Position numbers and translations under genes: made by a program. Below the pieces are notes generated by a model. It did not search any database, was not told the origin of the DNA, and was given only the letters and a program-made list of their open reading frames with translations. Shown piece after piece: positions 35,777-64,000 of a DNA stretch of 64,000 bases; position 1 is the first letter of the stretch; the number at the start of each line of letters is the position of its first letter. The DNA is from Zootoca vivipara (Eukaryota), in assembly GCF_963506605.1 (NCBI RefSeq), contig NC_083277.1, positions 6,572,001-6,636,000 of the forward strand, in the 5' to 3' direction.

Positions 35777-36130
35777 TCCTGCTTGGTAGGGGGTTGGACT
35801 GGATGGCCCTTGTGGTCTCTTCCAACTCTATGATTCTATGACTGGAAAGAGAAGTTGCTGAATTGCAACTTATCACCAAGCTCAAAACCATGGAGGGACC
35901 TGGTTTGAACAGAGATATCGGGTTCTTATCTCATTATACATGATAAGCGATCTTCAGCCATCTCAACCCTTGCTTTTTCATGCAAAACCATTTGCAGTCG
36001 TTTGCGGTCATCAACAGCTATCAGTCAGTCAATCACCCATTTCCACCACCCTTCTGAGTGATCCCCCCTCCCCATCCCCACCCCTCCCCACCCCTTCTCT
36101 ACATAAGTGCCTGGAAACTTCCATTTCACT

Positions 36131-36168
36131 GTATCTGAAGAAGTGTGCATGCACACGAAAGCTCATAC
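36131..36168 (+). ncRNA. Minimal type I hammerhead ribozyme motif in 5' pseudo-LTR
   Basis: gtat-CTGAAGA-a-gtgtgc.at.gcacac-GAAA-gc-TC-atac: core boxes, stems I and II, vestigial palindromic stem III (AGCT). Confidence 0.85.
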
Positions 36169-36267
36169 CAAAATAAAAACTTAGTTGGTCTTTAAGGTGC
36201 TACTGAAGGAATTTTTTTATTTTACTTCGATCCAGACCAACACGGCTACCTACCTGTAACCAGAACT

Positions 36268-38973
36268 ATGGAAGGCACCACATTGAGCCGCATGAAATGG
36301 AAGTCCATCAACCTCACCAAGAAACTTGCCCAGGTACAAACTGACATCCTCTTTCTATCTAAATGCAAAAACCTGGACATTGTACCTAAGGGTCTTAGAA
36401 TTAAGAACCCTCTTCAATCAACTTATCCCACAGAATATGCCAGAAAACTATGCCACACTTTATCTAAGAAACTGCTGAAACATCTTATCGGCGTTCTGTA
36501 TTCCAAACAGAAGTTAATAAAGGAGGAACTCTCTGCACTGGAGAACTCCATCAGGAATCACCCGGCCTGGCAGAAGTTCCACAAGGAAAAACAAACCATT
36601 TACCACTCTCAACTGGAGTTACTGAAGAACCAGAAAAATAAAAAACTCTGCAACCTTTCCAACCTACAGGCCACCAATCAAAACAAGATCAACAACATTG
36701 TCAATCTTTCACAGCAAACACTCAGCCCAGCTGAGGAATCCGTCCTTTCACGGGGACTATCATTCTGCCCTGCCAAATCCCAACACATGATTCAGTTCTG
36801 CGGGGACCTGGAAGCATTTTTCCGCCGTTTACGCCTGAAGGAGTATTTTCATCACACACAAGAACAAGACAAAGTAGAACAAACTACATCCCCACAACAC
36901 AACACCTCTCAACTTACTGGGGAACAACCATCACCCTCCAAACGCATCAATGAACAGAACATTGACCACCAACTACCACCGAAAAGAAGTTACACAAAAA
37001 GGGACTCCACATGGACCCCTCCTGATGGACGCAATACCACACTAGATCTGTACATCGAATGCTTCCGCCACAGAATCCAAACGGATGTGACCAGAAAACA
37101 CCATCGCTTACAACAAAATCTAAACCATGCTGAAAGGAGAGCCATAGAAAATCTCAGGAACAACCCAGACATTATAATTAAAGAGGCAGACAAGGGTGGA
37201 GCTGTCGTCATCATGAACAAAACTGATTACATCCAAGAGGCCCACAGACAACTTTCCAATACTGCCTTTTACATGAAATTGGACTCAGACCCCACACAAA
37301 CATACAAAAAAGAACTGAACAAGATTATTAAGGAGCTACCCCTACACATCCAAGAACAGATCCTCACAAACACACCAGCGGAACCTCGGCCAGGAACTTT
37401 CTATCTTCTACCCAAAATACACAAACCAGGAAACCCAGGACGCCCCATCATCTCAGGTATTGGCACCATTACAGTGGGTGTTTCCGGCTATATGGACTCT
37501 GTTCTGAAACCATATGCTATCAGTGCTCCCAGCTACGTACGTGACACCACAGATTTTCTGAGGAAAATACAATATTTGAACAATCTTCCTAACAATACTA
37601 TACTAGCCACTATGGATGTGGAATCTCTATATACCAACATCCCACACAATGATGGTTTACAAGCCATAAGGAACACCATTTCAGATAAAACCACAGCGGA
37701 CTTTGCTACCAAACTCTGCCACTTTGTCCTTACCCACAACCACTTCAAATTTGGTGATGACCTGTTCCTCCAGATCAGCGGCACAGCCATGGGCACCCGC
37801 ATGGCCCCACAGTATGCCAACATCTTCATGGCAGATTTAGAACAACGTTTCCTTAACTCCTACCCACTCAAACCTCTCCTGTACCTGCGATACATTGACG
37901 ATATTTTTATTATCTGGACACATGGACAACAGACCCTGGAAACCTTCCACCAGACATTCAATGACTTTCACCCCACCATCAACCTAACAATGAACCAATC
38001 TATGCAAGAAATACATTTTTTGGACACTACTATAAAAATACAGGATGGACGTATAGACACCACCTTATACAGAAAACCAACTGACCGACAAACATATCTA
38101 CATGCTTCTAGCTACCATCCCAAACATACCAAACAATCCATCGTATACAGCCAGGCCTTACGTTACAACCGCATCTGTTCCAACTCTACAGACAGAGAAT
38201 CTCACCTAAGAGATCTACAGCAAACCTTTTTAGAACTAAAATATCCACCTGATGAAGTTAAACAACAGATCAACAGAGCCAGACAGATACCTAGAGAGAA
38301 CCTGCTGCAAGACAGACCCAAAAAAGAAAATAACAGAACACCACTAGTCATCACATACAGCTCCCAAGCTAAAACAGTACAACGCATCATCAGAGATCTA
38401 CAGCCTCTCCTGGACAATGACCGCTCCCTTTCTCAAGCTCTGGGAGGAAGACCTTTCATTGCCTACAGACAGCCACCCAATCTTAAACAACTCCTCACCC
38501 ACAATAATACAACCACCAGACTTAACATGGACACTGGTACCAGAGCCTGCAATAAACCCAGATGCCAACTTTGCTGCCACATACACCCAGACAACACCAT
38601 TACTGGCCCCAACAACATCCAACATACCATCTCAGGACTATTTAATTGCTCATCCTCTAACATTGTGTATGCCATCAAATGCCAACAGTGCCCTTCAGCT
38701 CTCTATATTGGACAAACAGGCCAAACCCTACGCCAAAGGATAAATGGACATAAATCTGACATCAGGAACCAGAAGACAGAAAAACCAGTAGGAGAACACT
38801 TCAATCTCCCAGGACATTCTATACAAGATCTCAAAGTAGCTGTCTTACTACAAAAGAATTTCAGAAATAGACTGGAAAGAGAAGTTGCTGAATTGCAACT
38901 TATCACCAAGCTCAAAACCATGGAGGGACCTGGTTTGAACAGAGATATCGGGTTCTTATCTCATTATACATGA
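36268..38973 (+). CDS. Penelope-like element ORF: reverse transcriptase + Cys-rich linker + GIY-YIG endonuclease (901 aa)
   Basis: ADKGGAVV, LPKIHK, MDVESLYTNIP, GTAMG, RYIDD; CNKPRCQLC linker; IVYAIKC...LYIGQTG..LRQRINGH endonuclease. Confidence 0.96.
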   Translation: MEGTTLSRMKWKSINLTKKLAQVQTDILFLSKCKNLDIVPKGLRIKNPLQSTYPTEYARKLCHTLSKKLLKHLIGVLYSKQKLIKEELSALENSIRNHPAWQKFHKEKQTIYHSQLELLKNQKNKKLCNLSNLQATNQNKINNIVNLSQQTLSPAEESVLSRGLSFCPAKSQHMIQFCGDLEAFFRRLRLKEYFHHTQEQDKVEQTTSPQHNTSQLTGEQPSPSKRINEQNIDHQLPPKRSYTKRDSTWTPPDGRNTTLDLYIECFRHRIQTDVTRKHHRLQQNLNHAERRAIENLRNNPDIIIKEADKGGAVVIMNKTDYIQEAHRQLSNTAFYMKLDSDPTQTYKKELNKIIKELPLHIQEQILTNTPAEPRPGTFYLLPKIHKPGNPGRPIISGIGTITVGVSGYMDSVLKPYAISAPSYVRDTTDFLRKIQYLNNLPNNTILATMDVESLYTNIPHNDGLQAIRNTISDKTTADFATKLCHFVLTHNHFKFGDDLFLQISGTAMGTRMAPQYANIFMADLEQRFLNSYPLKPLLYLRYIDDIFIIWTHGQQTLETFHQTFNDFHPTINLTMNQSMQEIHFLDTTIKIQDGRIDTTLYRKPTDRQTYLHASSYHPKHTKQSIVYSQALRYNRICSNSTDRESHLRDLQQTFLELKYPPDEVKQQINRARQIPRENLLQDRPKKENNRTPLVITYSSQAKTVQRIIRDLQPLLDNDRSLSQALGGRPFIAYRQPPNLKQLLTHNNTTTRLNMDTGTRACNKPRCQLCCHIHPDNTITGPNNIQHTISGLFNCSSSNIVYAIKCQQCPSALYIGQTGQTLRQRINGHKSDIRNQKTEKPVGEHFNLPGHSIQDLKVAVLLQKNFRNRLEREVAELQLITKLKTMEGPGLNRDIGFLSHYT

Positions 38974-39160
38974 TAAGCGATCTTCAGCCATCTCAACCCT
39001 TGCTTTTTCATGCAAAACCATTTGCAGTCGTTTGCGGTCATCAACAGCTATCAGTCAGTCAATCACCCATTTCCACCACCCTTCTGAGTGATCCCCCCTC
39101 CCCATCCCCACCCCTCCCCACCCCTTCTCTACATAAGTGCCTGGAAACTTCCATTTCACT

Positions 39161-39198
39161 GTATCTGAAGAAGTGTGCATGCACACGAAAGCTCATAC
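39161..39198 (+). ncRNA. Minimal type I hammerhead ribozyme motif in 3' pseudo-LTR
   Basis: Identical to 36131-36168. Confidence 0.85.
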
Positions 39199-41079
39199 CA
39201 AAATAAAAACTTAGTTGGTCTTTAAGGTGCTACTGAAGGAATTTTTTTATTATGATTCTATGATTCCTCCTTTCCGTCCCGCCCCGCTCGTGAGAACGCG
39301 GACGGGAACGAGGTGCTTTATCTCCCCCCCCCCCAGGGGCCCGCCTCTACTCTAACTCCAACTCCTCCTCCCTCTGCATGCATCCGGTTCACTTTAACCC
39401 TTACAGCACCAAACTGTGAAGGGGACCTCCCTCCCTCCTTCTCCCTCTGCACCCCCCCCCGCCCCCGAAAGCAAAAGAGCCAAGGAGGCAATGAATCATG
39501 GAATTGCAGAGCCAGAAGGGACCCCCCAAGGGCATCCAATCCAACCCCCTGCAATTATCTTTAATAATAATAATAATAATAAATTTTATTTATACCCCGC
39601 ACTCCCCAGCCAAAACCGGGCTCAGGGCGGCTAACACTAGATATATAAAACAATTGATTAAGATAGAACTTAAAAACAAGATTAAATACAACATTAAAAT
39701 TAAAATGCAGCCTCATACGAAAAGGGAAAGGGAAAGTGGGGGAGGGGATCAAGTCGGTTCCAGGCCAAAGGCCAGGCAGAACAACTCTGTCTTACAGGCC
39801 CTGCGGAAAGAAATCAGGTCTCACAGGGCCCTGGTCTCATGAGACAGAACGTTCCACCAGGTCGGAGCCAGTGTTGAAAAGGCCCTGGCTCTGGTTGAAG
39901 CTAATCTGACTGCCTTCGGGCCCGGTACCTCTAGGGTGTTGCTATTTATGGACCTTAAGGTCCTCCGTGGGAAATACTAGGAGAGGTGGTCCCGTAAGTA
40001 CGAGGGTCCTAGGGTCTTTTGCCCTAGAATGTGCTATTCTAGGCTGCATCCCCAGAAGTAAGAGCTGACAGTAAGAGCTGTTCAGCAGTGGAATTTGCTA
40101 CCAAGGAGTGTGGTGGAGTCTCCTTCTTTGGAGGTCTTTAAGCAGAGGCTTGACATATGTCAAGAATGCTTTGATGGTGTTTCCTGCTTGGCAGGGGGTT
40201 GGACTGGATGGCCCTTGTGGTCTCTTCCAACTCTATAATTCTATGATTCTAAATACAGTGCCCAGATCAAGGGAAGTCATAGTAACACTCTGTTCTGCCT
40301 TGGTGTGGTGTCCAGTTCTGGGTGCCAAGAGTTTTAAGGATAGAATCACAGAAACTTAAAGTTGGAAGGGACTCCCAAGGGACATCTAGTCCAACCCCTT
40401 GCGATGGAGGAATAACAGCTAAAGCATCCATGAGAGATTGCCACCAAAGCTCCAGGAGGAAACAGGTATTGCACAGAGATGGTGCTCTTCTGAGGCATCA
40501 GACTCCTTGCCTCTTTGTGGGAGAGCCCTGCAAAAATAGTTGGAGGAAGCTGGCAGAGAAGACTCCAAGCTGTTTTAGCACTTTTGTGAATCTTCAGTCC
40601 CCCACCCAGAAATCCCATCATCTCACAGCTCACCAGGACCCATCATTCATGTAACACATGACTCAGCAGAGTTTGATTTCAAATTGTTTTAACATTAACA
40701 TCTTGAAACGTGCCAGCCCAGCCTCTATAGCAGACGAATGTCTTTGAAAGTGGCTTTTTGGCAATAAAGTCCATTGAACGAATTCCATTTTTAACGTTTT
40801 TCTGTGTTGTGAAAATTTTAAAAAAATTAATATTTTCTGGTATTAGCCTGATGCCCATTGTTTGAAAGATGGTTGCATTTTAGGGACTTTCTTCAAGGAA
40901 AAGAAAATATTTTCCTGCTCTTTCGCCCTTTGATGCAATAGGTCGAAGATGCTCTGAATCAGACCGCTGGATCAATGTAGCCTGGCCTCAGTTATCTGTG
41001 CACAGGTGACTGCCTGTATAGACTCACCTGAGCTCTGCAGCTCTCTCCTGATTGAAGTGCAGAGAGAGTGAGGACCAGG

Positions 41080-47802: not shown

Positions 47803-48907
47803 CTGGGAGGGAAGGAAAAACATTTCATCCTTATAGATCAGATTATCAACCAGCTACATAAAAAAAGTCTAATTGCTGATCATTATTCTCGTAATTGGAT
47901 GACACCTTCTTGAGAGTTCTCAAGGAGAGAGAACTGTTTAGACTCGGGGAGGGTTTTTTCCGGAAAGAGATAGCATGCAGGACATATGTGGTGGACATGT
48001 GATAAAATTAAAGGCTTCTGGGATATGGTGTACCGGTATGAAGAGCCAACGAAAATGTTCAAGCAAAACTTTGTTAAGAAATCAGAAGCCTTTTTTAATT
48101 GGGGATATTAGACACAGATATAGCCAGAGAAAATAAGAAAATATTCCTTTACGCTACAGGGGCTGCGAGAACAGAACAAAAATTGGAAAAAAGATACAAT
48201 TCTGAAAAAAATGAGTGGCAAGATAAATTATTTGACTATATTGAATTGGCTAGATTGACAGAAGCCATTAGAGGCCAGCCCAAGCAAAAATTTCAAAAAG
48301 AACGGGGGAAATATAGAGAATACCTTAAACAGCAGTGCCCTCAAATTAATACTTGGACTTATTTCAATTAACTTCTGCAAAATAAATTATGGTATAAAAG
48401 CTAAAAACAGAAAGAAAATGGGGTAATAATGAACTAAGGAGGAGACAGTTTACCAAAAATGAAAAGAGAACCGTGTTGAGGATGAAGGAAGTCAATTGGA
48501 AGAAACAAAGAATTGATGCTTTTGAATTATGGTGCTGGAGGAGACTCTTGAGAGTCCCATGGACTGCAAGAAGATCAAACCTATCCATTCTGAAGGAAAT
48601 CAGCCCTGAGTGCTCACTGGAAGGACAGATCGTGAAGCTAAGGCTCCAATACTTTGGCCACCTCATGAGAAGAGAAGACTCCCTGGAAAAGACCCTGATG
48701 TTGGGAAAGATGGAGGGCACAAGGAGAAGGGGACGACAGAGGACGAGATGGGTGGACAGTGTTCTCGAAGCCACCAACATGAGTCTGACCAAACTGTGGG
48801 AGGCAGTGGAAGACAGGAATGCCTGGCGTGCTATGGTCCATGGGGTCACGAAGAGTCGGACACGACTAAACAACAAACAACAATATACACATACATACAC
48901 ATACATA

Positions 48908-49090
48908 GTTACAGGTAGGTAGCCATGTTGGTCTGAGTCGAAGCAAAATAAAAAAATTCCTTCAGTAGCACCTTAAAGACCAACTAAGTTTTTATTTTGG
49001 TATGAAGAAGTGTGCATGCACACGAAAGCTCATACCAAAATAAAAACTTTGTTGGTCTTTAAGGTGCTACTGAAGGAATTTTTTTATTTT
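48908..49090. mobile_element. Short inverted-repeat derivative of the Penelope pseudo-LTR
   Basis: 48908-49003 is the reverse complement of ~36165-36260; 49003-49090 is a forward copy of ~36136-36223; 13-bp TSD atacacatacata. Confidence 0.9.
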
Positions 49091-52000
49091 ATACACATAC
49101 ATATGTATTGTTGACTATTTGATCTGTCTAAGTTTCCGTATGTTACTATGTTTTATTTGTATTTCTGTGTTTTTTTTGTGTAATATTACTTTTATGTTTA
49201 GTTTTATGAGTGTGTGTATGTGTTGTAAAATAAACTTAACAATAATAATAATAATGAGATAGCTTGCCAGGGCTTGCTAGCTCCATCACCTGCTGCGAGA
49301 GGAAAAGGGGACAAGAAGCTCATGCTTGTGTCTCAGAGGCAAATTGAAACACATCCAAATACACGAGGCATAATAAAAAGTTGTATCGGTGGTCTGAGTG
49401 GATAAATAAAACTTTATTGTTTGAAGCTTTAGCCCCCCACAAGGGAGACACAACGAACATACGAGGTCAAGAGGGGATACAATAAACAATCAAAAGTTTA
49501 TTATTGGATCCACACAGGCGTCAAACCTATGTTAACGATAAAAACCTACTTTCCCCTTCAATTAGTCATGGGTTGGTTTTTTAAAAGACAATTTCTGGTG
49601 GTTTTTTAAACAAATACAAAAACGATTAAGCACCTACCCAGGATCCAAGATTCAAACCTATTACTTTTTAGGTAAACCCTCCACTGAGAATATTGAGCAG
49701 TCGGCACAAGATCTCGATTTGGGTCTGGCGAGATGCTCAGACGCGGCTGTATCCCGGATAGGATTGTAATGTTCCCCCCCCCCCCATTATTCAATCTGAA
49801 ATAATTTCTTCCCTGCATCTGAGATCCGCTATAATGCTTCTATCTATGGAAGCTGCATTGCTTTCACAGCTATCAACGCCCCTTTTCAATATGCCTGCCT
49901 GGTATTTCACTAACCTTGTCTATCTTGTCTTCCTTTCTTTCTCCACATCCTATGGATAACATAACACATCTCCATCCACCTACATTCCTATTCAGGTGTC
50001 ACTAACTAGGGTCTGCTACCGTACCCACCTGGGCTTTTCAAGCTCTGCTTTAACCCTGCAAATGCCAAACTCCCCCTTCTCCCAATCCAACAAACGTTTG
50101 GGTGAGCAGTAGTATTCCTAGCAAGAAGCAGTGCCCGGAAAACACCGGAATGGGGGTGGGGAGAGGTCTGAGCCTGCATGGGCTCCTGTCACTCCCTAGC
50201 CTGCACTGTTTCTGACACTTGATGGCACTGGGCCTGATCCTTATACATACCTTTCTCTTCCCAGCTCCCTCCCATTCCAATACACATAAGCAACAATGCC
50301 CCAGAGAGAACCGGTGTGGTGTAGCGGTTAGAATGTTGGACTAGGAGCCGGGAGACCCGGGTTTGAATCCCCGCTCAGCCACGAAGCACACTGGGTGACC
50401 TTGGGCCAGCCACTGCCTTTCCGCCTGGCCTACCTCACAGGGTTGTTGTGAGGAAAGGATACGGAGGGGCAGAAAGGTGGGGTATAAAGGGCGGTGAGGA
50501 CATCACTCCTACGCACCCCTGTTGCCACTGCCTGGCCAGCTAGGGTAGGTTAATCTGCTTTCATTTCCATCTGAACAGTTCATTTCCACCTGGAAGTCTT
50601 GCGTAGTTGAGTCTTTACATCAGTGGCTCTCAAAACTTTCTTCCCTCTGGGGGGCACATTTTCAGTATGAAAATTTCCTCGCGCCACACCAGGCATTTTA
50701 TTGATAAGAAATGCATTGGGGGGGAAGAAAAGAAACAGCTCCTAGGAGTACTTGGTTTCGGCAAGATTTCTTTCTTTCTGTTTGGTGTGGAACAGATGTC
50801 AAAGAGAAAAACAACTACTACCAGACTTTTAGAAGACATCTGATGGCAGCCCTGTTTAGGGAAGCTTTTAATGTTTAATAGATTACAGTATTGTATTTTA
50901 ATATTCTGTTGGAAGCCGCACAGTGGCTGGGGAAACCCAACCAGATGGGCAGGGTATAAATAATAACTGTATTATTATTATTATTATTATTATTATTACT
51001 ACTATTATTACTAAATTTTGTATTGAATTTTCCAAACATTTTCACAATAATCTGCATCTCAGATGATTACATTGTTTCATAAATTGACTTCCCATTTTCA
51101 CCTCCACTGTGTTTTCACTCAAACCTTTTCTGCTGCTGCATTATATATTTATGTATTGCAGAAAGTTTCTCTATTACAGTTAAGGCTTTGAAAAAAATTC
51201 TATCCCTATTCTGCAAATAACATACGGTAAATCATTTCGACACTGTACTATGCTACACTGAAATGTTAAAATGTTTATTTGATCGTTCTTGTTATCTTGC
51301 CATCCTCCACTGACATCCTATCTTGCCATACCCTTTGAGAACCACCCAATTAAAGTTTTGCGTTGTGCCAACACAATGCCAACCTCATCCAGACAAGGAA
51401 GATCTGGGATACCAAGGCATCATCACGTACAATGATTTGGAGAAGAGGGCACTGGAATCAAAGGGTACTTATGAAATTACTCAGGGTTTGTTTTTGTTTT
51501 TTAGCAGGAACGTGGGGAAACTCTGCTCCCTTTCCTTTTGAAAATTAAATAATTATTATCTTTTGTCTGGGAGTGCTTGAACGGATATACCGTATAACCC
51601 AATACCTGAGCCCAAAATCCACCTATATCTGTAATCAATAAAGTTGTCACCACATCCTTGTCTGCTTGAGTTTATTAATCACATCTTACATTTAGTCACT
51701 GGGGGGTGGCAGCACTGCGACTGGACCCATAATAAACAAACAAACAAATAAAAAAGTCCCCGCCCTCTTTCCCCCAGAAAAAAGCACTGGGTACTGGAAT
51801 CAAAAAGTACTTACCAAATGACTATTGTGGATATATTACAGGTGGAACGGTCTCTGTGTTGCTATTTCAACTAGAAACAAGCAAAAATAAAAACTCTTTT
51901 TTTAAAAAAATACATTAAAGTCCCACATCGAATATAACTGATCTGCAGAAAGGACTTTATGATCTGAAAATAGACGGTGTATGTACTTCTGCAAACCAAG

Positions 52001-53408: not shown

Positions 53409-56400
53409 ATCTTATTATTTTAATTGTTTTAACTGTTTTAATGGCTATGCTGTTGAACTGGCGAGAATGCAACTGAAAACTAGCCGTCTAACAAAAACAT
53501 CTGTTTTGCAATAAGTCTACCGTAGTCTGCACTTGATCTATACCAGGCCTGTCCTGATGCCAGAGATGACTGACAGCGTACGGACATCTGGCCTAATGAA
53601 AATTTGATACAGATAATGATCTTTGATACAGATAATGATCAAAAAACAATGGGAATGCCTGACCGAGTATCTAAGGAAATCAGGTCTGGGAGCAAAAACA
53701 TGGTTATGTTTGGACTAACTCTGCAGGAAATATATAGAGTGAAAATAATATGAATGCTGTGTGGAAAGCGGTGGAAGTGCGCTATGCATTAAAATATTAA
53801 TGTAAAGTATCAAAAAACAAGATATATTGTTTGTATGTTTTTTGTATTGTTTTTGCTTACTAGCTTTTATATATAATTTATATCTACTTATTTGTTTTCT
53901 GTTTTTTATTGTATTTTATGCGATTTACTAATAAAGTTTTTTAAGATCTAAATTTTTTTTGATACAGATAATGATTTATTGAACACTTACAGATAAATTG
54001 TAAACAGGGGGAAAAAAACATTAGCAGGATGATTGTAATGTTTTTATCTTTACAATAATCCTGCTAATGTTTTTTATCTGCAGGATAAATAGAGCATGTA
54101 TTTACAGTTGATAATTAAATGAGCAAGTTAAATTAATTTGCATCTGCAGAAGATATGAAAAAATAAATTTAAGGAACTGCAGAAAGAGGGGGAAGGAAGT
54201 CTAATTTTGAAATGTTAAACGGATTGTAAAATGAATGAAATGTATGAATTTGAAAAGTATAATTATAGTATTGTACAGTTGGAAGGGATTCTGTTGAGGA
54301 TCATCTAGTGCTCGAACCCTCTGCAATGTAGTAAAAAGGCAGCTGTCCCATCCTTTTTACATTTGCTCTCAGCCCTCCTTTGCCCTCCTCCTGCTATGTC
54401 AATTTACATATATTTCAAAGGGTCTGCCCTAAGTAGGATTTAGTTGGATGTAGCCTGCTATTATGACCAAAGTAGAATCATAGAATCATAGAGTTGGAAG
54501 AGACCACAAGGGCCATCCAGTCCAACCCCCTGCCAAGCAGGAAACACCATCAAAGCATTCCTGACAGATGGCTGTCAAGCCTATGCTTAAAGACCTCCAA
54601 AGAAGGAGACTCCACCACACTTCTTGGCAGCAAATTCCACTGTCGAACAGCTCTTACTGTCAGGAAGATCTTCCTAATGCTTAGGTGGAATCTTCTTTCT
54701 TGTAGTTTGAATCCATTGCTCCGTGTCCGCTTCTCTGGAGCAGCAGAAAACAACCTTTCACCCTCCTCTATATGACATCCTTTTCTATATTTGAACATGA
54801 ACCTTCTCTTCTCCAGGCTAAACATACCCAGCTCCCTAAGCCGTTCCTCATAAGGCATCATTTCCAGGCCTTTGACCATTTTCGTTGCCCTCTTCTTTAC
54901 ACGTTCCAGCTTGTCAGTATCCTTCTTGAACTGTGGTGCCCAGAACTGGACACAGTACTCCAGGTGAGGTCTGACCAGAGCAGAAGACAGTGGTACTATT
55001 ACTTCCCTTGATCTAGACACTATACTCCTATTGATGCAGCCCAGAATTGCATTGGCTTTTTTAGCTGCTGCATCACACTGTTGACTCATGTCAAGTTGGT
55101 GGTCTACCAGGACTCCTAGATCCTTTTCACATGTACTGCTCTCAAGCCACGTGTCACCCATCCTGTATTTGTGCCTTTCATTTTTTTTGCCCAAATGTAG
55201 TACTTTTTTTTTGCCCAAATGTAGTACTATTCATCTTTTTTGCTTTGGCCCAGTTGTCTCTGTTAAGGTCATTCTGAAGTGTGATCCTGTCCTCTGGGGT
55301 ATTAGCCACCCAAAGTAGCTTACCCAAAAAGATCTGCACAAACCAGTTTATCTGAGTGCATTATTCTCAGGGTGGGGGGACTCATTTATTTATCATTGCT
55401 TAATCATATGGGACGCGGGTGGCACTGTGGGTTAAACCACAGAGCCTAGGACTTGCCGATCAGAAGGTCGGCCATTCGAATCCCCGCGACGGGGTGAGCT
55501 CCCATTGTTCGGTCCCAGCTCCTGCCAACCTAGCACATCAAAGTGCAAGTAGATAAATAGGTACCACTACAGCAGGAAGGTAAACAGCGTTTCCGTGTGC
55601 TGCGCTGCTTTGCCAGAAGCGGCTTCATCATGCTGGCCACACGACCTGGAAGCTGTATGCCGGCTCCCTCGGCCAATAACGCGAGATGAGCACCACAACC
55701 CCAGAGTCGGCCACGACTGGACTTAACAGTCAGGGGTCCCTTTACCTTTACCTATAAAACCATAACAAATTGACCCTTGTAGTAAAAAGCCATTTATCCA
55801 ATGTGTTGAAGCAAAAATGTCTCCAGAAAGTGCCGAGAGTGGGTGCCTTTCACATCTCGACAGGAACGATATTCCAGAGAAGAGGGCAGCCACTCTCAAG
55901 ACCCTGCTCAGAGTCACTGTGCAAAAGGGCTTCTGAGATCTTGGGGATGTGCAGGAGAGACACTCGACATACTGCAGGGATCTAGTGGTGGATAAGGCAT
56001 AAGCCGCTCTCTCAAGTAACCTGGTCTTGGGGTATATGGGACCTTGAACTTGGCCCAGGAGCTGACTGACAGCCTGTGGGAATCTCGCTAGCAGGGTGCT
56101 CAGCAGAGACCGAGCAACGGGAGCTCACCCCGTTGTGGGGATTCGAACTGCCGACCTTCTGATCGGCAAGCCCTAGGCTCTGTGATTTAACCCACAGCGC
56201 CACCCGTGTGAAACAGACTCCTGGAACGGATTAAATAAAGAACCGAGGTACGACTGTAGAAAAAATAATTAAAAACAAGAAAATCATAGGAAGAATCTAT
56301 GAAAATAACTAAAGCTATAAAACTCAGGAATCATAAAGCAAGCATACAAATAGCACAATAAAAATGTTCAGCGTGAATTCTGATCATCTCTGCTTCCGGG

Positions 56401-56884: not shown

Positions 56885-57352
56885 ATGGCTGCTGCTGGGG
56901 GTCGCATCCAGCGTCTCCATGATGAAGCCACGTGCTCCATCTGCCTGGATTACTTCAAGGATCCAGTCATCATCCCAGAGTGTGGGCACAACTTCTGCCA
57001 GTCCTGCCTGATCCAGTACTGGGAGGAATCGGAGGCAGAGGCTTCCTGCCCTCAATGCAGACAAAGAGTCCAGAGAAGGGGTCTCATCCCCAATCGGCAA
57101 CTGGCTAACATGGTAGAAATAGCTCAGAATCTCAGTCTTCAAAAGGGGAGAGAAGGAGGAGGAGGCAAAGGGAGAATGTGCGAAGAGGGAAAGGGAGAAG
57201 GAGGGAAAGGAGGAGTCTGCGAGAAACACCGGGAGCCCCTGAAACTCTTTTGCAAAGTCCACGAAGCCCCCATCTGTGTGGTTTGTGACAAATCAAAGGA
57301 ACATGCAAATCACAAGGTGATTCCTCTGGAGGAGGCTTTCGAGGAATACAAG
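56885..57352 (+). CDS. TRIM E3 ligase (TRIM27/39-like), exon 1: RING + B-box2
   Basis: EATCSICLDYFKDPVIIPECGHNFCQSC...CPQCR RING; CEKHREPLKLFC...ICVVC..SKEHANH B-box; donor AAG|GTAAG. Confidence 0.93.
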
Positions 57353-58969
57353 GTAAGGAGATCCATGGATCTTGAGGAGGGAGAAATAGCTGTGGATTCT
57401 TCCTGAGAGGTTTTATTTTAAATTCTCAGGTCCAAAGTAGGCATGGCATTAATTGGTGGTTCTTTATTACATTAGAAATCTTTCTCTCTGCCAGGGGGAC
57501 AAGGGGATCTTGAAATACAGCAGCTTCAAAGATTTGAATTTGGACCTTGGCAGGGAGAGAAAGGGTTAACCCCACTTTCCCCAGCCAGGCTGCTTTGTAC
57601 GCATTTAGAACTCTGCAAATGTAAATTGCACATACTGTACACAACTAAGTACATGTCTCCTTTGGCTACCAGGATGCCTCCTTAATGCCCTGCAAATGAG
57701 GGATCAGCTGTGGGGGGGAGGGGACTGTTAGCCAGGAATTGACCAGAAGGTGTAGGATCCCCCCCCAAAGTATCTGGTGGAAGCAGATTTGGGAGTGGGG
57801 GTGGAAGCACCTACTGGTGGGGAGCACACTTATTCTGGGGTGTGTGTGTGCTGTGGGGCCTGTGCAATGAGGTTTCAGTGGGGAGGGGGGACTGAGGATC
57901 TCCTTCCAACCCAAATGGCAAAGGACTCAGTGGCTCAGGGTAGCATCTGCAAAGACTAGGGGAAAGATGATTTCCCTTAACAACACAGAATTGGACATGT
58001 ACTATTATATATACTGTATATACCGGTATATATGGGCGCAGGTGGCACTGTGGGTTAAACCACTGAGCCTAGGGCTTGCCAATCAGAAGGTTGGCAGTTC
58101 GAATCCCTGCGAAGGGGTGAGTTCCTGTTGCTCAGTCCCAGCTCCTGCCCACCTAGCAGTTCGAAAGCACATCAAAGTGCAAGTAGATAAATAGGTACCG
58201 CTACAGCGGGAAGGTAAACGGCATTTCCATGTGCTTCTCTGGTTCGCCAGAAGTGGCTTTGTCATGCTGGCCACATGACCTGGAAGCTGTACGCGGGCTC
58301 CCTCGGCCAATAATGCAAGATGAACGCGCAACCCCAGAGTCGGTCACGACTGGACCTAATGGTCAGGGGTCCCTTTACCTTGGAGAAGACAAAGGAGCAA
58401 GCCTTTGCTCGTCTCCAGACTAGTTAGTTGGACTAGAAAACTTTTTCATCACAGTTCCGCAGTGGTTTTCAACCAGTGTGCTGTGAATGGTGCCTCCGGG
58501 GCTGGCCAGGGGGTGTTGGCTGCCAGGAACTGAGGCAGCCTCGAAGTAAGCAAGCAAACTGGTGAGGGACTCTTGCTGTTGGGGATGGACAGACAAGCCC
58601 CAGGCCCCTGTGGGGCAGCGGGGGGGGGGGAGGAACCTCTCTTTGGGGCAGCTCAGAGACCAAGAGGAGGACTCCTAAGGAGAGGGGGGAGGAGAGGAGG
58701 CTGAGAGAGCACTCCGCAAGGGAGGGTGTTTGAGAAAGGGTGAGGGGCTGCCAGCTCTGCAAGTGACCTAACTGGGACCCTGAGCCCCACAGGGGTGCCG
58801 CAGAAACAGGGAGCTGTGGACCCTAAAAGGTTGAAAACCGCTGTACTTTTATTTCCTACAGTAAAATTACTTTGCTATTATAGCAAGGCCACTGGACCCA
58901 AGAAGCCAGTATAATATTCATCTCCACTCTCTGTGTCTGTCAAACCTGAGTTTTCCCTTTTCTCTTTAG

Positions 58970-59065: not shown

Positions 59066-59930
59066 GTAAGGGTCTCTATTGGTACTAGACAGGGAACAAA
59101 CACTTGAGACCTCCTGGTATAGGGCAGTATATAATTTCAATAAATAATTATAAGAAGAAGAAGAATCGAGTCAGGACTGAGGAGGGATGGGAAAATCTGC
59201 CCATTTCAGCTTCTCCCCATTTCTCCTTTTTCCATATCATTCTGTTTATCAATTTATTATTATGAAAATGAATCACATGTTAGGGTAGCTACCTCCTTGT
59301 ATAAATATTTTGATCTGTACTGTACCCTCATATAAATACATTTTTGTGTGAATATTACCTGGCTGGGTCAAACTTGAAAATACCAGAGGTGTGAATTTCA
59401 AAGCTGTATTTTGGTCTCCATATTTTTTCAGCAATAGTGAATTAGGTAAGTTCACCTTTGAATGCAGCTAAATTGAGTTTCTTTCCCATTGTCGTATATT
59501 ATGTAAATAGCAGTCAAGGAGAAGCCTGAGGACTTGTGAGCTGAAAAGGTGGAAGCAATTCAATCCAAATCCGGATTTACCAGAAAAATTACTAAAGAAT
59601 TGTCTTTCTAAATGTGCACTCTTGTTCATTTTTAGGAAACTCTGGCCATTTTGAACCTTTAAATAAAATAGGGGAGCTATGGGGATGAACCCTGCACTTT
59701 GTCCTCCTCCTCTTCCCCTGTTTCTGTTGCCTTCCTACACCTAAATGGCCCCAGTCTAAACTGAGGGGTCTTTTATGTTCCTGGATGTTCTCTGAACAAC
59801 TTAGAACTCAGGTTATGCCATGCTCCAAAACATGCAGGAAACTCCCGTTTCTAGAAAAAAAAAAGCTCCTTCCACACTCAGACCTCCTCTTTTCTTGCAG
59901 GTAGGTAGCCGTGTTGGTCTTTTCTTGCAG

Positions 59931-60161
59931 AAACTAACAGAAATTGAGAGGCTGAAGGCTGTGGAGAAGTTCAGACAACCGCGCCAGTTCCTGGAAGAAC
60001 AAGAAAAACATCTGCTGACTCATGTGGAAGAGGTGGAGAAGGAGATTGCAGGGAGAAGGGATGAGCAGCTGGCTAAACTCTCCAGGAATCTCTCCTCTCT
60101 TGAAAGGATCATCCAGGAGATGGAGGAAAAGGGTCAGCAGCCAGCGAGTGAACTCCTGCAG
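59931..60161 (+). CDS. TRIM exon 3 (coiled coil); alternative in-frame acceptor at 59901
   Basis: 231 bp, KLTEIERLKAVEKF...EMEEKGQQPASELLQ, donor CAG|GTAAG. Confidence 0.9.
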
Positions 60162-61133
60162 GTAAGACGGTGGCAGGAACAGCACAAGGCTCCAGGAAAA
60201 GGCTGCCTCCAATCCTTTCTGTGCCCCTTTCATGTATGCAAGGAGTGCAGGGGCTCAGTTGATAGAGCCTCTAGTAAGGTTTGTAATGGACAGGAAGACC
60301 CAAGAGACCTAGGATGCTTAACTCATCTGAATGCAGACGAGAGATTCTTCTGTGTCCTTGATGGAACGGGAGGTGATTTTCTGCTCTTTGCTGATGATTT
60401 GTCTCTGAATGCCTTCCCACTGGGCAATGCTGCCTTCCTGCCCTCTGCTGGGCTTCGCCAAAGATGCATTCTGGTCTCCTTCCAACATGAGCCAGTCTCT
60501 TGACCAAGCTTCTCTTCCCGTTCCCTCCACGACTTCTGGGTTGATCCCCTTCCCCGTGGACACAGATCAGCCCAAAATGGTGCTCAGTCATAGTGACCAA
60601 AGAGCAAGACAGAGGGACTCATCCAGACTGATATTTGCTTTGATGTTGCAATAAGGAGCAAGTTTTTCCTGAGGGAAAGTGGCAGGACAAAGGCAAAACC
60701 ACTTGGACCCGTGTTTTCTGGGCAATGGAAAAGCAGAAGTGTGGTTGAGCGCAAAGAAACACTGAGCTGTTTTATTACCCCTTTGGAGGCATTTTATGCT
60801 GCATGTCCTTTTTTTCATTTCCAGTTGGAAAGTAGAATTTAAAATTTGGGGACTTCTGTGGAAGACAATTTGGGACAGTGCCCTGGCAGGATTATGCTGT
60901 AGGCTTACTTACATCTCAATTGCACAATGCAAACGGGGGTAAAGTTAATAAATTATAATATAAGAGATGGGGTGGAATCTTTTCTTGAACCCACAAACAT
61001 GAAGTTTCCCTAAAATGCTGGTGGATTTTCATAAGGATTTTTTTTTTAAAAAAATTGCAAACAGATGTGGAAATGTGGAGAACTTGATACAGTATTGGAA
61101 AAGTTAATAATTCCCTTCTCTTTTCTCCTCTAG

Positions 61134-61156
61134 GATGTGAGAAGCACCTTGCAGAG
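61134..61156 (+). CDS. TRIM exon 4
   Basis: 23-bp exon DVRSTLQ(R) with polypyrimidine acceptor and GTAAGT donor. Confidence 0.85.
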
Positions 61157-62054
61157 GTAAGTGGATTTGGCTCATTTCCATTAGCATCCCTCCATGAGGC
61201 CAGAATGCAAGAACCTCAAACATGGCCCTCAAACAGGGGCGAGACTGTAGGATAGGACCCCCTCTTTGGAACTTGTAGCACCCCAATTCCCCCCAATGAA
61301 TTGGCGCTATTTCCTTTGTGAGGTTTGGGTTTACTTTTGTAATGTGTATGATTTGTTTTGTATTGGCCTGAATGAACCATTAGATTTGGATGTGCACCTG
61401 TGGAAGATCTGTCTCAACTTCTGCAAACATCTGATTCTGGAGCAGAGGTTATCTAATGTATTAAAGCAAGAGATCCCCAAGCTCCAGAAACCAATATTTT
61501 GAGTTTACTCAAGTGTCGCTAAGAGAAGGCTGTTTTACTGGCACACAACAAGCCAAAGCTGCTTTCCTAGGAAAAATTATTGCCTGAGTTGTTTCCTTCT
61601 AGACTGACCAGTTCAGTCACTCTTACAGCAAACACTCTGCTGGCCACCTCACCCTGTCCCAAGGAAACACCTGCCCCATAGAGCCCCTTGGGAGGGGGCA
61701 ATTTCTCACGAAGGAGCGGGAATTGGCTATTTTCCTGACCATATTCTGGCTGCAGTATTTAAATTTAAGGTGTCACTCAGGTTCAGAGTACAGGTTTTAA
61801 GGAACATTTCACATGCCATATGATTCTGCTTCTTCTTTGAATTGACATCAGTGGGGATACTCAGAGGCCTGGGGTTGCTGTTTTGGCCCCTGGGGGTCTG
61901 GCTGAGGAGTCCGTAGTGAGGAAAAAACTCCCCACTCAGTGCCTGCCTGTCCCTCTAGGCTTTCCACGGCCGGCTTCCTCCTCTCAATTCCTTTCTTTAC
62001 CTTAGCCAGAAATTGTGGATTTGAATGGGCTGACATTGTTTTTCTTTTCAGCAG

Positions 62055-62170
62055 GTATGAGAAAAGAGCGAGTCCAGAGAAGCCAGTGGCTTTTCCTGCA
62101 GAACTGAGGAACCAGTTGGAATCCTGCGTTCTAAATCACCTTGTGGAGGATGCAATGAAACAATGGAAAG
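62055..62170 (+). CDS. TRIM exon 5 (PRY-SPRY exon expected beyond the window)
   Basis: 116 bp, YEKRASPEKPVAFPAELRNQL...AMKQWK, CAGCAG acceptor, GTAATG donor. Confidence 0.82.
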
Positions 62171-62562
62171 GTAATGAAAAATGGTTGCCAGGATTTCACA
62201 CTGGGAATTCTATTATTCCTTCAGAACTGAACACGCCTGGCTTTTATTGTGTGGAACTGAGTAACCCCAGGATACCTTCCTTCTTGGTGCTCCAGCCTTC
62301 ATTTCCTGTCCCCCAGAATGGCCCATGTATATTGTGATGCTGAAGCTTGTAAAGAAAGCCTGAACCAGAGTGTAGAGCAAAGTCGGGATTTTTTCCTCCC
62401 CTGTGCATCTGTTTACAATTCTACGGAACCTCCTTTTCCTTTCGGTTCCCCATCTACACAATCTGGGTTTGTCCTTTTGGAGGTTCTCCTGCTCTGAATG
62501 GAGTCAAAGGGCATTAAGAAGCCCCCAGTTCCCCCTCTGCCTCCAGCTCAGGCTTGTTTCTC

Positions 62563-62978
62563 GTTAGTAAGTGCACCAATAAAGAATAGACCAAGAACTC
62601 AGGCTAAGTCTTTAAGTTGTAGTCAGAGTTGTAAATCTAAATTGTAGTCAAAAATCAGTCATAAGTCAGAAGCCAGCATAATTCAGAAGCATATACGTGT
62701 CCTATTATTTTCTGCGCAGAGAATCTCAGGATACACGTTGATCTTTTCAAACTTAGTTGCTAACTCTGAGAAATGCAGGAAATAATAGGACACATGTATA
62801 TGATCTCTTTAAACCTGGCTGATGAAGGTGGAGACACCGAAACAGTGCCCTGTCCTGGCTTCTGATTTATGCTGGCTTCTGACTTCTGACTGATTTTTGA
62901 CTACAATTTAAAGACTTACAACTCTGACTACAACTTAAAGACTTAGCCTGAATTCTTGGTCTATTCTTTATTGGTGCA
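62563..62978. mobile_element. Non-autonomous fold-back element carrying a hammerhead motif (probably from a second Penelope-like family)
   Basis: ~120-bp inverted arms 62572-62690 / 62858-62978, inner arms 62691-62715 / 62775-62801, flanking duplication (ca)ggcttgtttctc. Confidence 0.8.
62812..62861 (+). ncRNA. Type I hammerhead ribozyme motif
   Basis: cctgg-CTGATGA-a-ggtg.gaga.cacc-GAAA-cag.tgcc.ctg-TC-ctgg: both core boxes, stem II with GNRA loop, stem III, GUC site; stem I weak (two G-U). Confidence 0.75.
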
Positions 62979-63404
62979 GGCTTGTTTCTCAGCAGTGGAG
63001 CCAAGGCCTGAGCCATCTCCTCCTCATACGTCCACCTGCAGCTGCTTCAAGATCTCATGAGAGTTCCCCCATTGAGGATGAGCCCCAAAGGGCACGATTA
63101 TGCTTGTTAACAGTCTGAAAGATTTGCAGAAGGTTTGTGAGGAAGGACTTCCTTTTGCCTGAGAGCTCTGCCAAGCCTTTCACATTAACCTTCGTTTCTC
63201 CTTGCTTATCACAAGTTTGGTTTCAATAATTTACCCCACTACTTTGCTTGAGGAAGTTGTTAAGGCTGCCTCCATCTCCCCTCTTTATCCTTTTGCAGGA
63301 TTCCTATAGCTCTGCCTCCCCTACAGTCCAAGAACGTAGAGCCCAATTTCAGGGACAAAGTTCAGAGACCACCGGGATTCATGCTGAATATTTTTATTCT
63401 TCTA

Positions 63405-63936
63405 CTAGTTGGCCCTGCCACGTGTTGCTGTGGCTCATCCGTGTAATTCCCCCCACCCTGTGCCGACCCATTACGTATCCCACCCCTTCCTCCCCCCACC
63501 CCCTGGCTCATCCCTGTGACTGGCCCCACCGTGTCCTGACCTATCCCGTCCCCTCCTCCCCACAACCCCCACCCAGGCGAGTCAGTACCTCCATTCGGCC
63601 TAGTCTGTAAAGGCTTCGGCCTAGTATTAACAGAGGTGCTGTTGAGAGGGAAGATTTTATAGGTGCAGTACCAGTGTAGCCGCCGCTAGAGGGTGCTGGT
63701 TTGCAAACTGGTTCTTTTTCCAGCATGCATTTTCATCCGAGTGGTGCGTTTTGAAATGTGGGGTTTTTGGGGGTTTTACCTGGCACACGTGTGACATCTG
63801 TCTTAGCAAACTTTCCTATAGCCTTCAGACATTTGCATGTGATGTTGCGTCAAAATTTCACCTCAATCGGTCAAGTGGTTTTGGTGAAAAGTGGAAACAC
63901 ACCCACATGCCCAGTTTACATTTATTTATAGATAGA
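63405..63936 (-). mobile_element. Non-autonomous Helitron
   Basis: Minus strand starts TC, ends CTAG, subterminal hairpin gccac..gtggc, inserted between A and T, no TSD. Confidence 0.75.
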
Positions 63937-64000
63937 TTTGTAAGCTTGCTTTATGATTGCTGAGTTTTAAGGCTTTAGTTATTTTTATAGATTGTTCCTA

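What the first reader, a model, noticed from the sequence alone, without database searches (positions are those of the whole stretch)
62549..62990. Fold-back element presenting a complete hammerhead ribozyme on the sense strand of a TRIM intron
Seen: a ~415-bp insert with a 12-14-bp target duplication forms a nested hairpin (outer ~120-bp arms, inner ~25-bp arms). The left arm is the reverse complement of the right half but skips ~62803-62857, which is the hammerhead (CUGAUGA, GNRA-capped stem II, GAAA, real stem III, GUC, predicted cut after 62854). Its sequence is unrelated to the Neptune element in this window, whose hammerheads lack a proper stem III. Known: Penelope-like elements and retrozymes carry type I hammerheads. 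Inference: in TRIM pre-mRNA the long stem would leave the ribozyme free to fold. It could cut the intron after exon 5, separating the RING/B-box/coiled-coil part from the expected PRY-SPRY exon. This may be an undescribed non-autonomous ribozyme retroelement family.
Basis: partly seen in the sequence, partly recalled or inferred. Interest (0 to 1): 0.82.

Follow-up and report, generated by a model that had tools for sequence, protein, structure and literature searches.

The report
Penelope-style hairpin insertion carrying a hammerhead
A 414-base hairpin-shaped insertion in a lizard TRIM gene intron is real and carries a hammerhead ribozyme motif of the kind found in Penelope-like retrotransposons, but its layout is the usual footprint of those elements and nothing shows that it cuts the gene's RNA.

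Summary
A 414-bp insert (62563-62976) has a perfect 14-bp target duplication. Its outer arms are ~120 bp and its inner arms 25-28 bp. A 56-nt piece (62803-62858), present only in the right half, holds a full hammerhead core. DNA reads show the exact empty site.

The motif is unlikely to be chance: 1 hit in 300 shuffled windows. It has the hallmarks published for Penelope-like-element (PLE) hammerheads: an extra base between A9 and G10.1, a G10.1-C11.1 pair, and a helix III that is a perfect palindrome in all 26 DNA reads covering it.

Two Neptune PLE insertions in this window have 13- and 14-bp duplications. One has the same layout, an inverted arm that omits the ribozyme. Inverted 5' copies are a documented PLE footprint.

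I read it as a low-copy, ORF-less, PLE-mobilised insertion: a new member of a known kind. It is not a separate kind of element. First-stage notes list similar hammerhead-in-inverted-repeat layouts elsewhere in this genome (unchecked).

The proposed cutting of TRIM pre-mRNA has no support. Helix I is predicted not to form. The hammerhead fold costs 6.5 kcal/mol against the best fold. Rfam models give no hit. RNA depth over the element is about zero in three runs.

The parts
62549..62562 (.). Left copy of the 14-bp target site duplication CAGGCTTGTTTCTC
   Evidence: family D5, 100%. The empty-site joint 62548->62977 has 14 shared letters.
62563..62571 (+). 9-nt extension (GTTAGTAAG) present only at the left end; possibly a short PLE-type 'tail'
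   Evidence: the reverse-complemented left half runs about 10 nt beyond the right end. The tail concept comes from PMC8557442 and PMC11167929. Applying it here is inference.
62572..62690 (+). Outer left arm: reverse complement of 62859-62978, the sequence that follows the predicted ribozyme cut
   Evidence: I1 97%, I2 96%.
62691..62715 (+). Inner left arm: reverse complement of 62775-62802
   Evidence: I3, 88%.
62716..62774 (+). 59-nt central loop with no partner
62775..62802 (+). Inner right arm, directly upstream of the ribozyme piece
62803..62858 (+). 56-nt piece absent from the left arm, holding the hammerhead. It belongs to a commoner repeat than the arms and has no target duplication of its own.
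   Evidence: and reading; 26 DNA reads at 62846 against a depth of 3.5-4 on the arms.
62819..62854 (+). Hammerhead core: CUGAUGA 62819-25; bulged A 62826; helix II 62827-38 (GAGA loop); GAA 62839-41; helix III 62842-53; C17 62854. The predicted cut is between 62854 and 62855.
   Evidence: Hallmarks compared with PMC4209133.
62815..62818 (+). 5' strand of helix I. It pairs with 62855-62858 as C-G, U-G, G-U, G-C: 4 bp, two of them wobble.
   Evidence: Read. Pair probability about 0.
62859..62976 (+). Outer right arm: the sequence downstream of the cut, ending at the presumed start site of reverse transcription. It contains short internal repeats of 17 nt and 27 nt.
   Evidence: D1, D3, I1, I2.
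62977..62990 (.). Right copy of the target site duplication
62055..62170 (+). TRIM exon of 116 nt (exon 5 in the canonical layout). The intron that holds the element starts at 62171, so the element begins 393 nt into it.
   Evidence: GT..AG joints 60161|61134 and 61156|62055, and loose ends behind 62170. The next exon's letters are not in the window.
56885..57403 (+). TRIM exon 1 reading frame (RING plus B-box); the exon's 3' end was not mapped
   Evidence: zf-C3HC4_4 1.1e-12, zf-B_box 3.1e-11.

Best explanation
This is a low-copy, ORF-less retroelement insertion made by the machinery of a Penelope-like element (PLE). It sits in the inverted-repeat layout those elements commonly leave.

The right half (loop, inner arm, hammerhead piece, outer arm) is the sense copy of an RNA that ends at 62976. 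The left half is an inverted copy of the same 3' region. Both were made at a staggered break that left the 14-bp duplication.

The inverted copy lacks the 56 nt that hold the ribozyme. I infer one of two causes. Either its template had been cut by the hammerhead, so that copying stopped 3-4 nt short of the new 5' end and resumed upstream, or the polymerase skipped the folded ribozyme.

The hammerhead is of the PLE type and serves the element family's own RNA, if it serves anything. In this copy, as a monomer in an intron, it is most likely inert, and the insertion is neutral for the TRIM gene.

Shown: the insertion, its duplication, its arms, the motif, and the parallels with Neptune insertions. 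Inferred: the enzyme that inserted it and the cause of the 56-nt skip.
For: 1. Hammerhead type. [quoted passage not shown]
- The candidate has A62826 between A9 and G10.1, and the pair G62827-C62838.
- All 26 DNA reads at 62846 carry G instead of T. That makes helix III ACAGGGCCCUGU, a perfect 12-nt palindrome.
- The window's Neptune hammerhead has the same plan: CUGAAGA-A-GUGUGCAUGCACAC-GAAAGCUC|AUACC, with a 4-bp helix I.

2. Chance. The descriptor gave 1 hit in 300 shuffled windows, and none with helix I of 4 bp or more.

3. Target duplications of the PLE insertions in this window:
- full-length Neptune, 13 bp;
- Neptune inverted derivative 48908-49089, 14 bp;
- this element, 14 bp.

4. Same layout in the Neptune derivative. 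Its left arm is the reverse complement of the post-cut sequence and ends exactly at the first base after the ribozyme cut. The ribozyme piece lies unpaired between the arms.

5. Literature.
- A purified lizard PLE protein nicks and extends both DNA strands and starts reverse transcription internally at two adjacent sites (PMC11167929).

6. The 56-nt piece has no flanking duplication of its own. This speaks against a later separate insertion.

7. The empty site is seen in reads.
Against: - No sequence similarity to the only autonomous PLE I could examine, the window's Neptune. No partner element has been identified.
- The inverted arm stops 3-4 nt from the predicted cut, not exactly at it.
- The left-end extension is 9 nt, not the 30-40 nt described for PLE tails.
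- The target CAGGCTTGTTTCTC is not AT-rich or microsatellite-like, unlike the reported PLE preference (PMC11167929, PMC8557442).
- The inner hairpin (25-28-bp arms plus a 59-nt loop) has no counterpart in the Neptune derivative.
- The arms have a DNA depth of only 3.5-4 where one copy should give about 1. Those few copies could simply be paralogous TRIM segments, so independent transposition of a 'family' is not shown.
- No Rfam hammerhead model matches at E<=10. The Neptune hammerheads also go undetected, so this weighs little.
Confidence: 0.62

Rival explanations
1. Two-step origin. A pre-existing hairpin element, either a fold-back MITE or a templated fold-back insertion, later acquired the 56-nt hammerhead piece in its right arm by capture or gene conversion from a PLE-type repeat.
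For: The 56-nt piece is about 7 times commoner in DNA reads than the arms: 26 reads at 62846 against 3.5-4 on the arms. The left arm joins its inner and outer parts cleanly without it.
Against: No duplication flanks the 56-nt piece, only 1 nt of ambiguity, while PLE insertions here make 13-14 bp duplications. The piece ends 4 nt after the cut site, so it lacks any downstream site where reverse transcription could start. The higher depth is equally explained if the ribozyme is the best-conserved part of a diverged family, so that reads from distant copies fit only there at the 85% cut-off.
Confidence: 0.15
2. A DNA-transposon fold-back MITE, in which the hammerhead-like letters are a chance or decayed resemblance with no retroelement history.
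For: The element is almost entirely palindromic with identical termini, has no poly(A) and no ORF, and has no Rfam hammerhead hit. The hammerhead fold is not the predicted fold. Across the several hundred windows read in this genome, a few chance hits to a loose descriptor are expected: 0.0033 per window times 779 windows is about 2.6.
Against: To my knowledge no DNA transposon superfamily makes a 14-bp duplication. It does match the PLE insertions in this window. The motif carries three PLE-specific traits beyond the core, one of which appears only in the reads. The asymmetry boundary lies 3-4 nt from the predicted cut, as in the Neptune derivative, where it is exact.
Confidence: 0.12
3. One reading: the ribozyme folds in TRIM pre-mRNA and cuts the intron after exon 5, lowering or truncating the TRIM product.
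For: The core is complete and sense to the gene. Helix III is stable as a monomer, unlike most PLE hammerheads. The long arms do leave the piece unpaired.
Against: Helix I is 4 bp with two wobble pairs and has a pair probability of about 0. The hammerhead fold is 6.1 kcal/mol worse than the best fold in isolation and 6.5 worse in context. PLE hammerheads cleave poorly in vitro or need protein (PMC4209133; PMC11167929). RNA depth over the element is 0-1.3, and no begin/end pile-up is listed at 62854/55. The intron reads that exist include 4 from the empty-site version. Only 0, 5 and 8 RNA reads are 99% or more like this copy.
Confidence: 0.05

Closest known systems
Penelope-like element insertions with an inverted 5'-truncated copy (Evgen'ev & Arkhipova; Craig et al. 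2021, PMC8557442), including the Neptune-derived insertion at 48908-49089 of this window
   Same: Both have a 13-14-bp target duplication. Both ends of the insert are the same sequence in opposite orientation. A hammerhead is present in the sense half only. The inverted arm covers the post-cut sequence and stops at or near the ribozyme cut. One end carries a short extra extension.
   Different: There is no sequence similarity to Neptune. This element has an extra inner hairpin and a 59-nt loop. Its arm stops 3-4 nt short of the cut, while the Neptune derivative's stops exactly at it. Its target is not AT-rich, and it is low-copy.
Minimal hammerheads of PLE pseudo-LTRs (Cervera & de la Pena 2014, PMC4209133)
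   Same: [quoted passage not shown]
   Different: Helix III is 4 bp plus a 4-nt loop, so it is stable in a monomer. Most metazoan PLE hammerheads have 0-2 bp there and are thought to act as dimers. Helix II is 4 bp, not the larger helix II (6 bp in the examples given) that the paper reports.
Animal non-LTR retrozymes (Cervera & de la Pena 2020, PMC7229834; Li et al. 2026 preprint, 10.64898/2026.07.22.740005)
   Same: Small, ORF-less, type I hammerhead, target duplication longer than 4 bp, linked to PLEs. Monomer derivatives are common, and reptile families average 176 bp.
   Different: Retrozymes are direct tandem repeats with two or more hammerheads that release a circular RNA. This element has one hammerhead and an inverted duplication, so it cannot release a unit RNA.
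Fold-back MITEs of DNA transposons
   Same: Nearly full-length palindrome, small size, no ORF, flanked by a duplication.
   Different: The 14-bp duplication fits no DNA transposon superfamily known to me. One arm carries a ribozyme module.

Membership tests
Hammerhead ribozyme (type I) | Conserved core: C3 U4 G5 A6 N7 G8 A9, G12 A13 A14, the A15.1-U16.1 pair, and H17 not G | tested here: met
   CUGAUGA 62819-25, GAA 62839-41, A62842-U62853, C62854. One extra A (62826) follows A9; this is usual in PLE hammerheads.
Hammerhead ribozyme (type I) | Three helices around the core | tested here: inconclusive
   Helix II has 4 bp with a GAGA loop and helix III has 4 bp. Helix I has 4 bp, two of them G-U, with a predicted pair probability of about 0. 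The whole fold scores -6.6 kcal/mol against a best fold of -12.7.
Hammerhead ribozyme (type I) | Match to the curated Rfam hammerhead covariance models | tested here: not met
   No hit at the gathering score or at E<=10 on 551 nt. The window's Neptune hammerheads are also missed, so the models are blind to this subtype.
Hammerhead ribozyme (type I) | Self-cleavage at H17 | not testable with these tools
   RNA depth over the site is 0-1 read, and no ends are listed there.
Penelope-like element (non-autonomous derivative) | PLE-type hammerhead: extra nucleotide between 9 and 10.1, G10.1-C11.1, palindromic helix III | tested here: met
   Criteria from PMC4209133. A62826 and G62827-C62838 are present. 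The palindrome ACAGGGCCCUGU is found in 26/26 DNA reads. The window copy has U at 62846, one change away from the palindrome.
Penelope-like element (non-autonomous derivative) | Insertion footprint: duplication of the length made by PLEs in this genome, an inverted 5' copy, and a tail at one end | tested here: met
   14 bp here against 13 and 14 bp for the two Neptune insertions. Inverted arms are present. The left-only extension is 9 nt, shorter than the published 30-40 nt.
Penelope-like element (non-autonomous derivative) | Sequence similarity to an autonomous PLE (pseudo-LTR or 3' end) | tested here: not met
   No similarity to the window's Neptune. Other PLE families of this genome could not be searched.
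Penelope-like element (autonomous) | Reverse transcriptase plus GIY-YIG endonuclease ORF | tested here: not met
   The insert is 414 bp. Only 49-aa ORFs cross it, and they run through the palindromic arms.
Non-LTR retrozyme | Two or more hammerheads in direct tandem repeats that bound a unit RNA | tested here: not met
   There is a single hammerhead in the element and in the 64-kb window under this descriptor. The duplication is inverted, not direct.
DNA-transposon MITE | Terminal inverted repeats with a duplication of a superfamily-specific fixed length, and many copies | tested here: inconclusive
   The termini are inverted. A 14-bp duplication fits no superfamily that I know of. Arm depth is only 3.5-4. 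A genome-wide copy census was not possible.

The most novel reading that the evidence does not exclude
The missing ribozyme piece in the inverted arm may be a fossil of hammerhead self-cleavage in vivo. On this reading, the inverted arms of PLE insertions arise when reverse transcription runs to, or nearly to, the 5' end made by the ribozyme and then switches template. Two unrelated elements in one window show it: the Neptune derivative, whose arm ends exactly at nucleotide 1.1, and this element, whose arm ends 3-4 nt short. A genome-wide census of such junctions would then give the PLE hammerhead a defined role, setting the switch point that creates inverted pseudo-LTRs. That role is still open, since in vitro the ribozyme was dispensable for insertion and no RNA ends were seen at the cut (PMC11167929).
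Probability: 0.3. Interest if true: 0.55.

Novelty: new member of a known kind. Interest (0 to 1): 0.27.

Why it matters
For the TRIM gene it probably does not matter. The insertion is intronic and absent from most paralogues, and no RNA was seen over it.

Its value is as a clean, dated example of how Penelope-like elements insert. It combines a perfect duplication, an observable empty site, and an inverted arm that omits the ribozyme. Together with the Neptune derivative 14 kb upstream, it suggests a testable link between hammerhead cleavage and the inverted repeats of these elements.

It also shows that a PLE-type hammerhead can carry a monomer-stable helix III in a lizard.

Tried and rejected
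- Rfam scans gave no hammerhead, at the gathering score on the whole window or at E<=10 on the region. The weak miRNA and snoRNA hits only reflect the hairpin shape. Rfam also misses the Neptune hammerheads, so it is uninformative for this subtype.
- Searches for other copies in the window found none: exact or 3-mismatch patterns and blastn with word size 7.
- Two scans of metagenome contigs, one with the ribozyme and one with the arm end, were blank. This was expected for lizard DNA.
- The only copy-number proxy was read depth from one DNA run. Its table of variant letters shows only the best-supported 40 of 893 sites. Conservation of the core among the 26 reads therefore cannot be claimed beyond 62846.
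- Alignment of the candidate with the Neptune hammerhead region shows no homology beyond the motif.
- The letters of the next exon, taken from loose read ends, are not in the window.
- L1-type twin priming was considered and rejected. It inverts an internal upstream segment, not the same 3' end, and there is no poly(A).
- Earlier notes of the scan, searched by sequence and by several word sets, gave nothing on this element.
- TRIM exons were searched one by one by reference.

Full report
**What is there**

The region 62549-62990 holds a 414-bp insert (62563-62976) between two perfect copies of CAGGCTTGTTTCTC.
- The insert is a nested palindrome. Its outer arms are 62572-62690 and 62858-62978 (two segments, 97% and 96% complementary).
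- Its inner arms are 62691-62715 and 62775-62799 (88%), around a 59-nt loop.
- As RNA it folds into one long hairpin: -236.4 kcal/mol, z = -23.7.
- Aligning the reverse-complemented left half to the right half shows that the right half carries 56-58 extra bases. Read by eye the extra piece is 62803-62858.
- The left end has 9-10 extra bases, 62563-62571.

**It is an insertion**

I laid one DNA run and three RNA runs of the same species on 59700-64000 at 85% likeness.
- Seven DNA reads and four RNA reads join 62548 directly to 62977 with 14 ambiguous letters. This is the exact empty site with a single copy of the duplicated target.
- About 6% of the DNA run (1.5 billion letters) was read, which should give roughly one-fold depth per copy. 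This assumes a genome of about 1.5 Gb; the size is my estimate.
- The flanking intron has a depth of about 24, so the TRIM segment exists in many paralogous copies, most of them without the insert.
- The arms have a depth of only 3.5-4. This is not an abundant family at 85% or higher.
- The 56-nt piece is different. 26 reads cover 62846, and the mean of 11 over its 144-nt bin fits about 26-fold depth over about 60 nt.
- The piece therefore belongs to a commoner repeat than the arms, or it is the best-conserved part of a diverged family.

**The hammerhead motif**

| Part | Letters and positions |
|---|---|
| Core 5' box | CUGAUGA, 62819-25 |
| Extra base | A, 62826 |
| Helix II | GGUG/GAGA/CACC, 62827-38 |
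| Core 3' box | GAA, 62839-41 |
| Helix III | ACAG/UGCC/CUGU, 62842-53 |
| Cleavage base | C17, 62854 |
| Helix I | 62815-18 with 62855-58: C-G, U-G, G-U, G-C |

A descriptor written for this layout finds only this site in the window. It found one hit in 300 dinucleotide shuffles of the 64 kb, and none with a helix I of 4 bp or more. At 0.0033 per window, a few chance hits are still expected over the hundreds of windows read in this genome, so the count alone does not settle it.

**Why the motif is a Penelope-type hammerhead**

Cervera & de la Pena 2014 (PMC4209133) name the traits that make PLE hammerheads non-random:
- the G10.1-C11.1 pair;
- a palindromic helix III/loop 3.

The candidate has the first two. 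All 26 DNA reads have G at 62846 where the window has T, which makes helix III ACAGGGCCCUGU, a perfect palindrome.

**The layout is a PLE footprint**

The window holds two other PLE insertions.
- The full-length Neptune (35842-39250) has a 13-bp duplication, TATGATTCTATGA.
- The Neptune-derived insertion at 48908-49089 has a 14-bp duplication, TATACACATACATA, and inverted arms of 61 nt with 24 nt between them.
- Reading that insertion (copies located), its left arm is the reverse complement of the post-cut sequence. The arm ends exactly at the first base after the ribozyme cut, abutting a 5'-truncated hammerhead that stays unpaired.

This is the same architecture as the candidate: an inverted copy of the post-cut sequence, with the ribozyme piece only in the sense half.

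The literature agrees.
- Craig et al. 2021 (PMC8557442) describe an inverted 5'-truncated copy and a one-sided tail as typical of PLE insertions.
- Frangieh et al. 2024 (PMC11167929) show that a purified lizard PLE protein nicks and extends both DNA strands from internal start sites on the RNA. That would make both ends of an insert the same sequence in opposite orientation.

**Differences I cannot explain away**
- The candidate's inverted arm stops at 62858/9, which is 3-4 nt short of the cut.
- It has an inner hairpin and a loop.
- The left extension is 9 nt, not 30-40.
- The target is not AT-rich.
- No autonomous partner is identified.
- The 56-nt piece has no duplication of its own. This argues against a later separate retrotransposition but not against capture.

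**Does it act on the TRIM gene?**

The gene is real and lies on the + strand.
- Exon 1 encodes RING and B-box domains.
- RNA joints with GT..AG define exons 59931-60161 (231 nt), 61134-61156 (23 nt) and 62055-62170 (116 nt). From my own knowledge these are the canonical sizes of exons 3-5 of class IV TRIM genes.
- The element starts 393 nt into the next intron, and the ribozyme is sense. The following exon is outside the window.

Evidence against activity:
- Helix I has a predicted pair probability of about 0.
- The hammerhead fold scores -6.6 against -12.7 kcal/mol for the best fold in isolation.
- Forcing the hammerhead fold in the whole element costs 6.5 kcal/mol.
- The 76-nt piece is no more stable than its shuffles.
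- PLE hammerheads cleave poorly or need their protein.
- In three RNA runs, depth over the element is 0-1.3, and no pile-up of read ends is listed at 62854/55.
- Some of the few intron reads come from the empty-site version. Only 0, 5 and 8 reads are 99% or more like this copy.

Cleavage is therefore untested, not disproved, but nothing supports it.

**Verdict**

It is wrong to set the element apart from Penelope-like elements, and its functional claim is unsupported.

I file it as a new, low-copy member of a known kind.

The most interesting residue is the possibility that inverted PLE arms mark template switching at ribozyme-cleaved RNA ends. That needs a genome-wide census I could not run.

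First-stage notes of this scan list several similar 'hammerhead inside an inverted repeat' layouts elsewhere in this genome. I could not check them.

Noticed in passing
window 48884-49103: A Neptune-derived inverted insertion with a 14-bp duplication (TATACACATACATA) in a TACA-rich target. Its inverted left arm ends exactly at nucleotide 1.1 after the hammerhead cut and abuts a hammerhead truncated within CUGAAGA. This looks like a genomic trace of an RNA template cut by its ribozyme.
   Followed up: partly
window 35829-39263: The full-length Neptune element has a 13-bp target duplication, TATGATTCTATGA (35829-35841 and 39251-39263). It carries identical hammerheads at 36135 and 39165. No Rfam hammerhead model detects them, even at E<=10.
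   Followed up: partly
window 59700-62580: The TRIM segment, introns included, has a DNA depth of about 20-28 where about 1 is expected per copy. Most RNA reads are only 90-95% alike. The locus therefore belongs to a large cluster of recent TRIM paralogues, and the RNA seen is mostly from other copies. Reads also show alternative acceptors at 62053 and 62056.
   Followed up: no
window 61010-61044: About 260 reads of one RNA run (X14 only, opposite direction to the TRIM reads) match just this 35-nt stretch, and unlike sequence follows on both sides. DNA depth here is about 180. It is a short piece of a high-copy repeat that is part of an abundant transcript elsewhere.
   Followed up: no
window 63300-64000: A high-copy repeat, with a DNA depth of 160-520, lies downstream of the element in the same intron. 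It was not identified.
   Followed up: no
window 55419-55556, 56012-56203, 57967-58194: Three copies of a short repeat, on both strands, whose translation shares 'ALWVKPQSLGLADQKVG'. It is probably a SINE and flanks TRIM exon 1.
   Followed up: no
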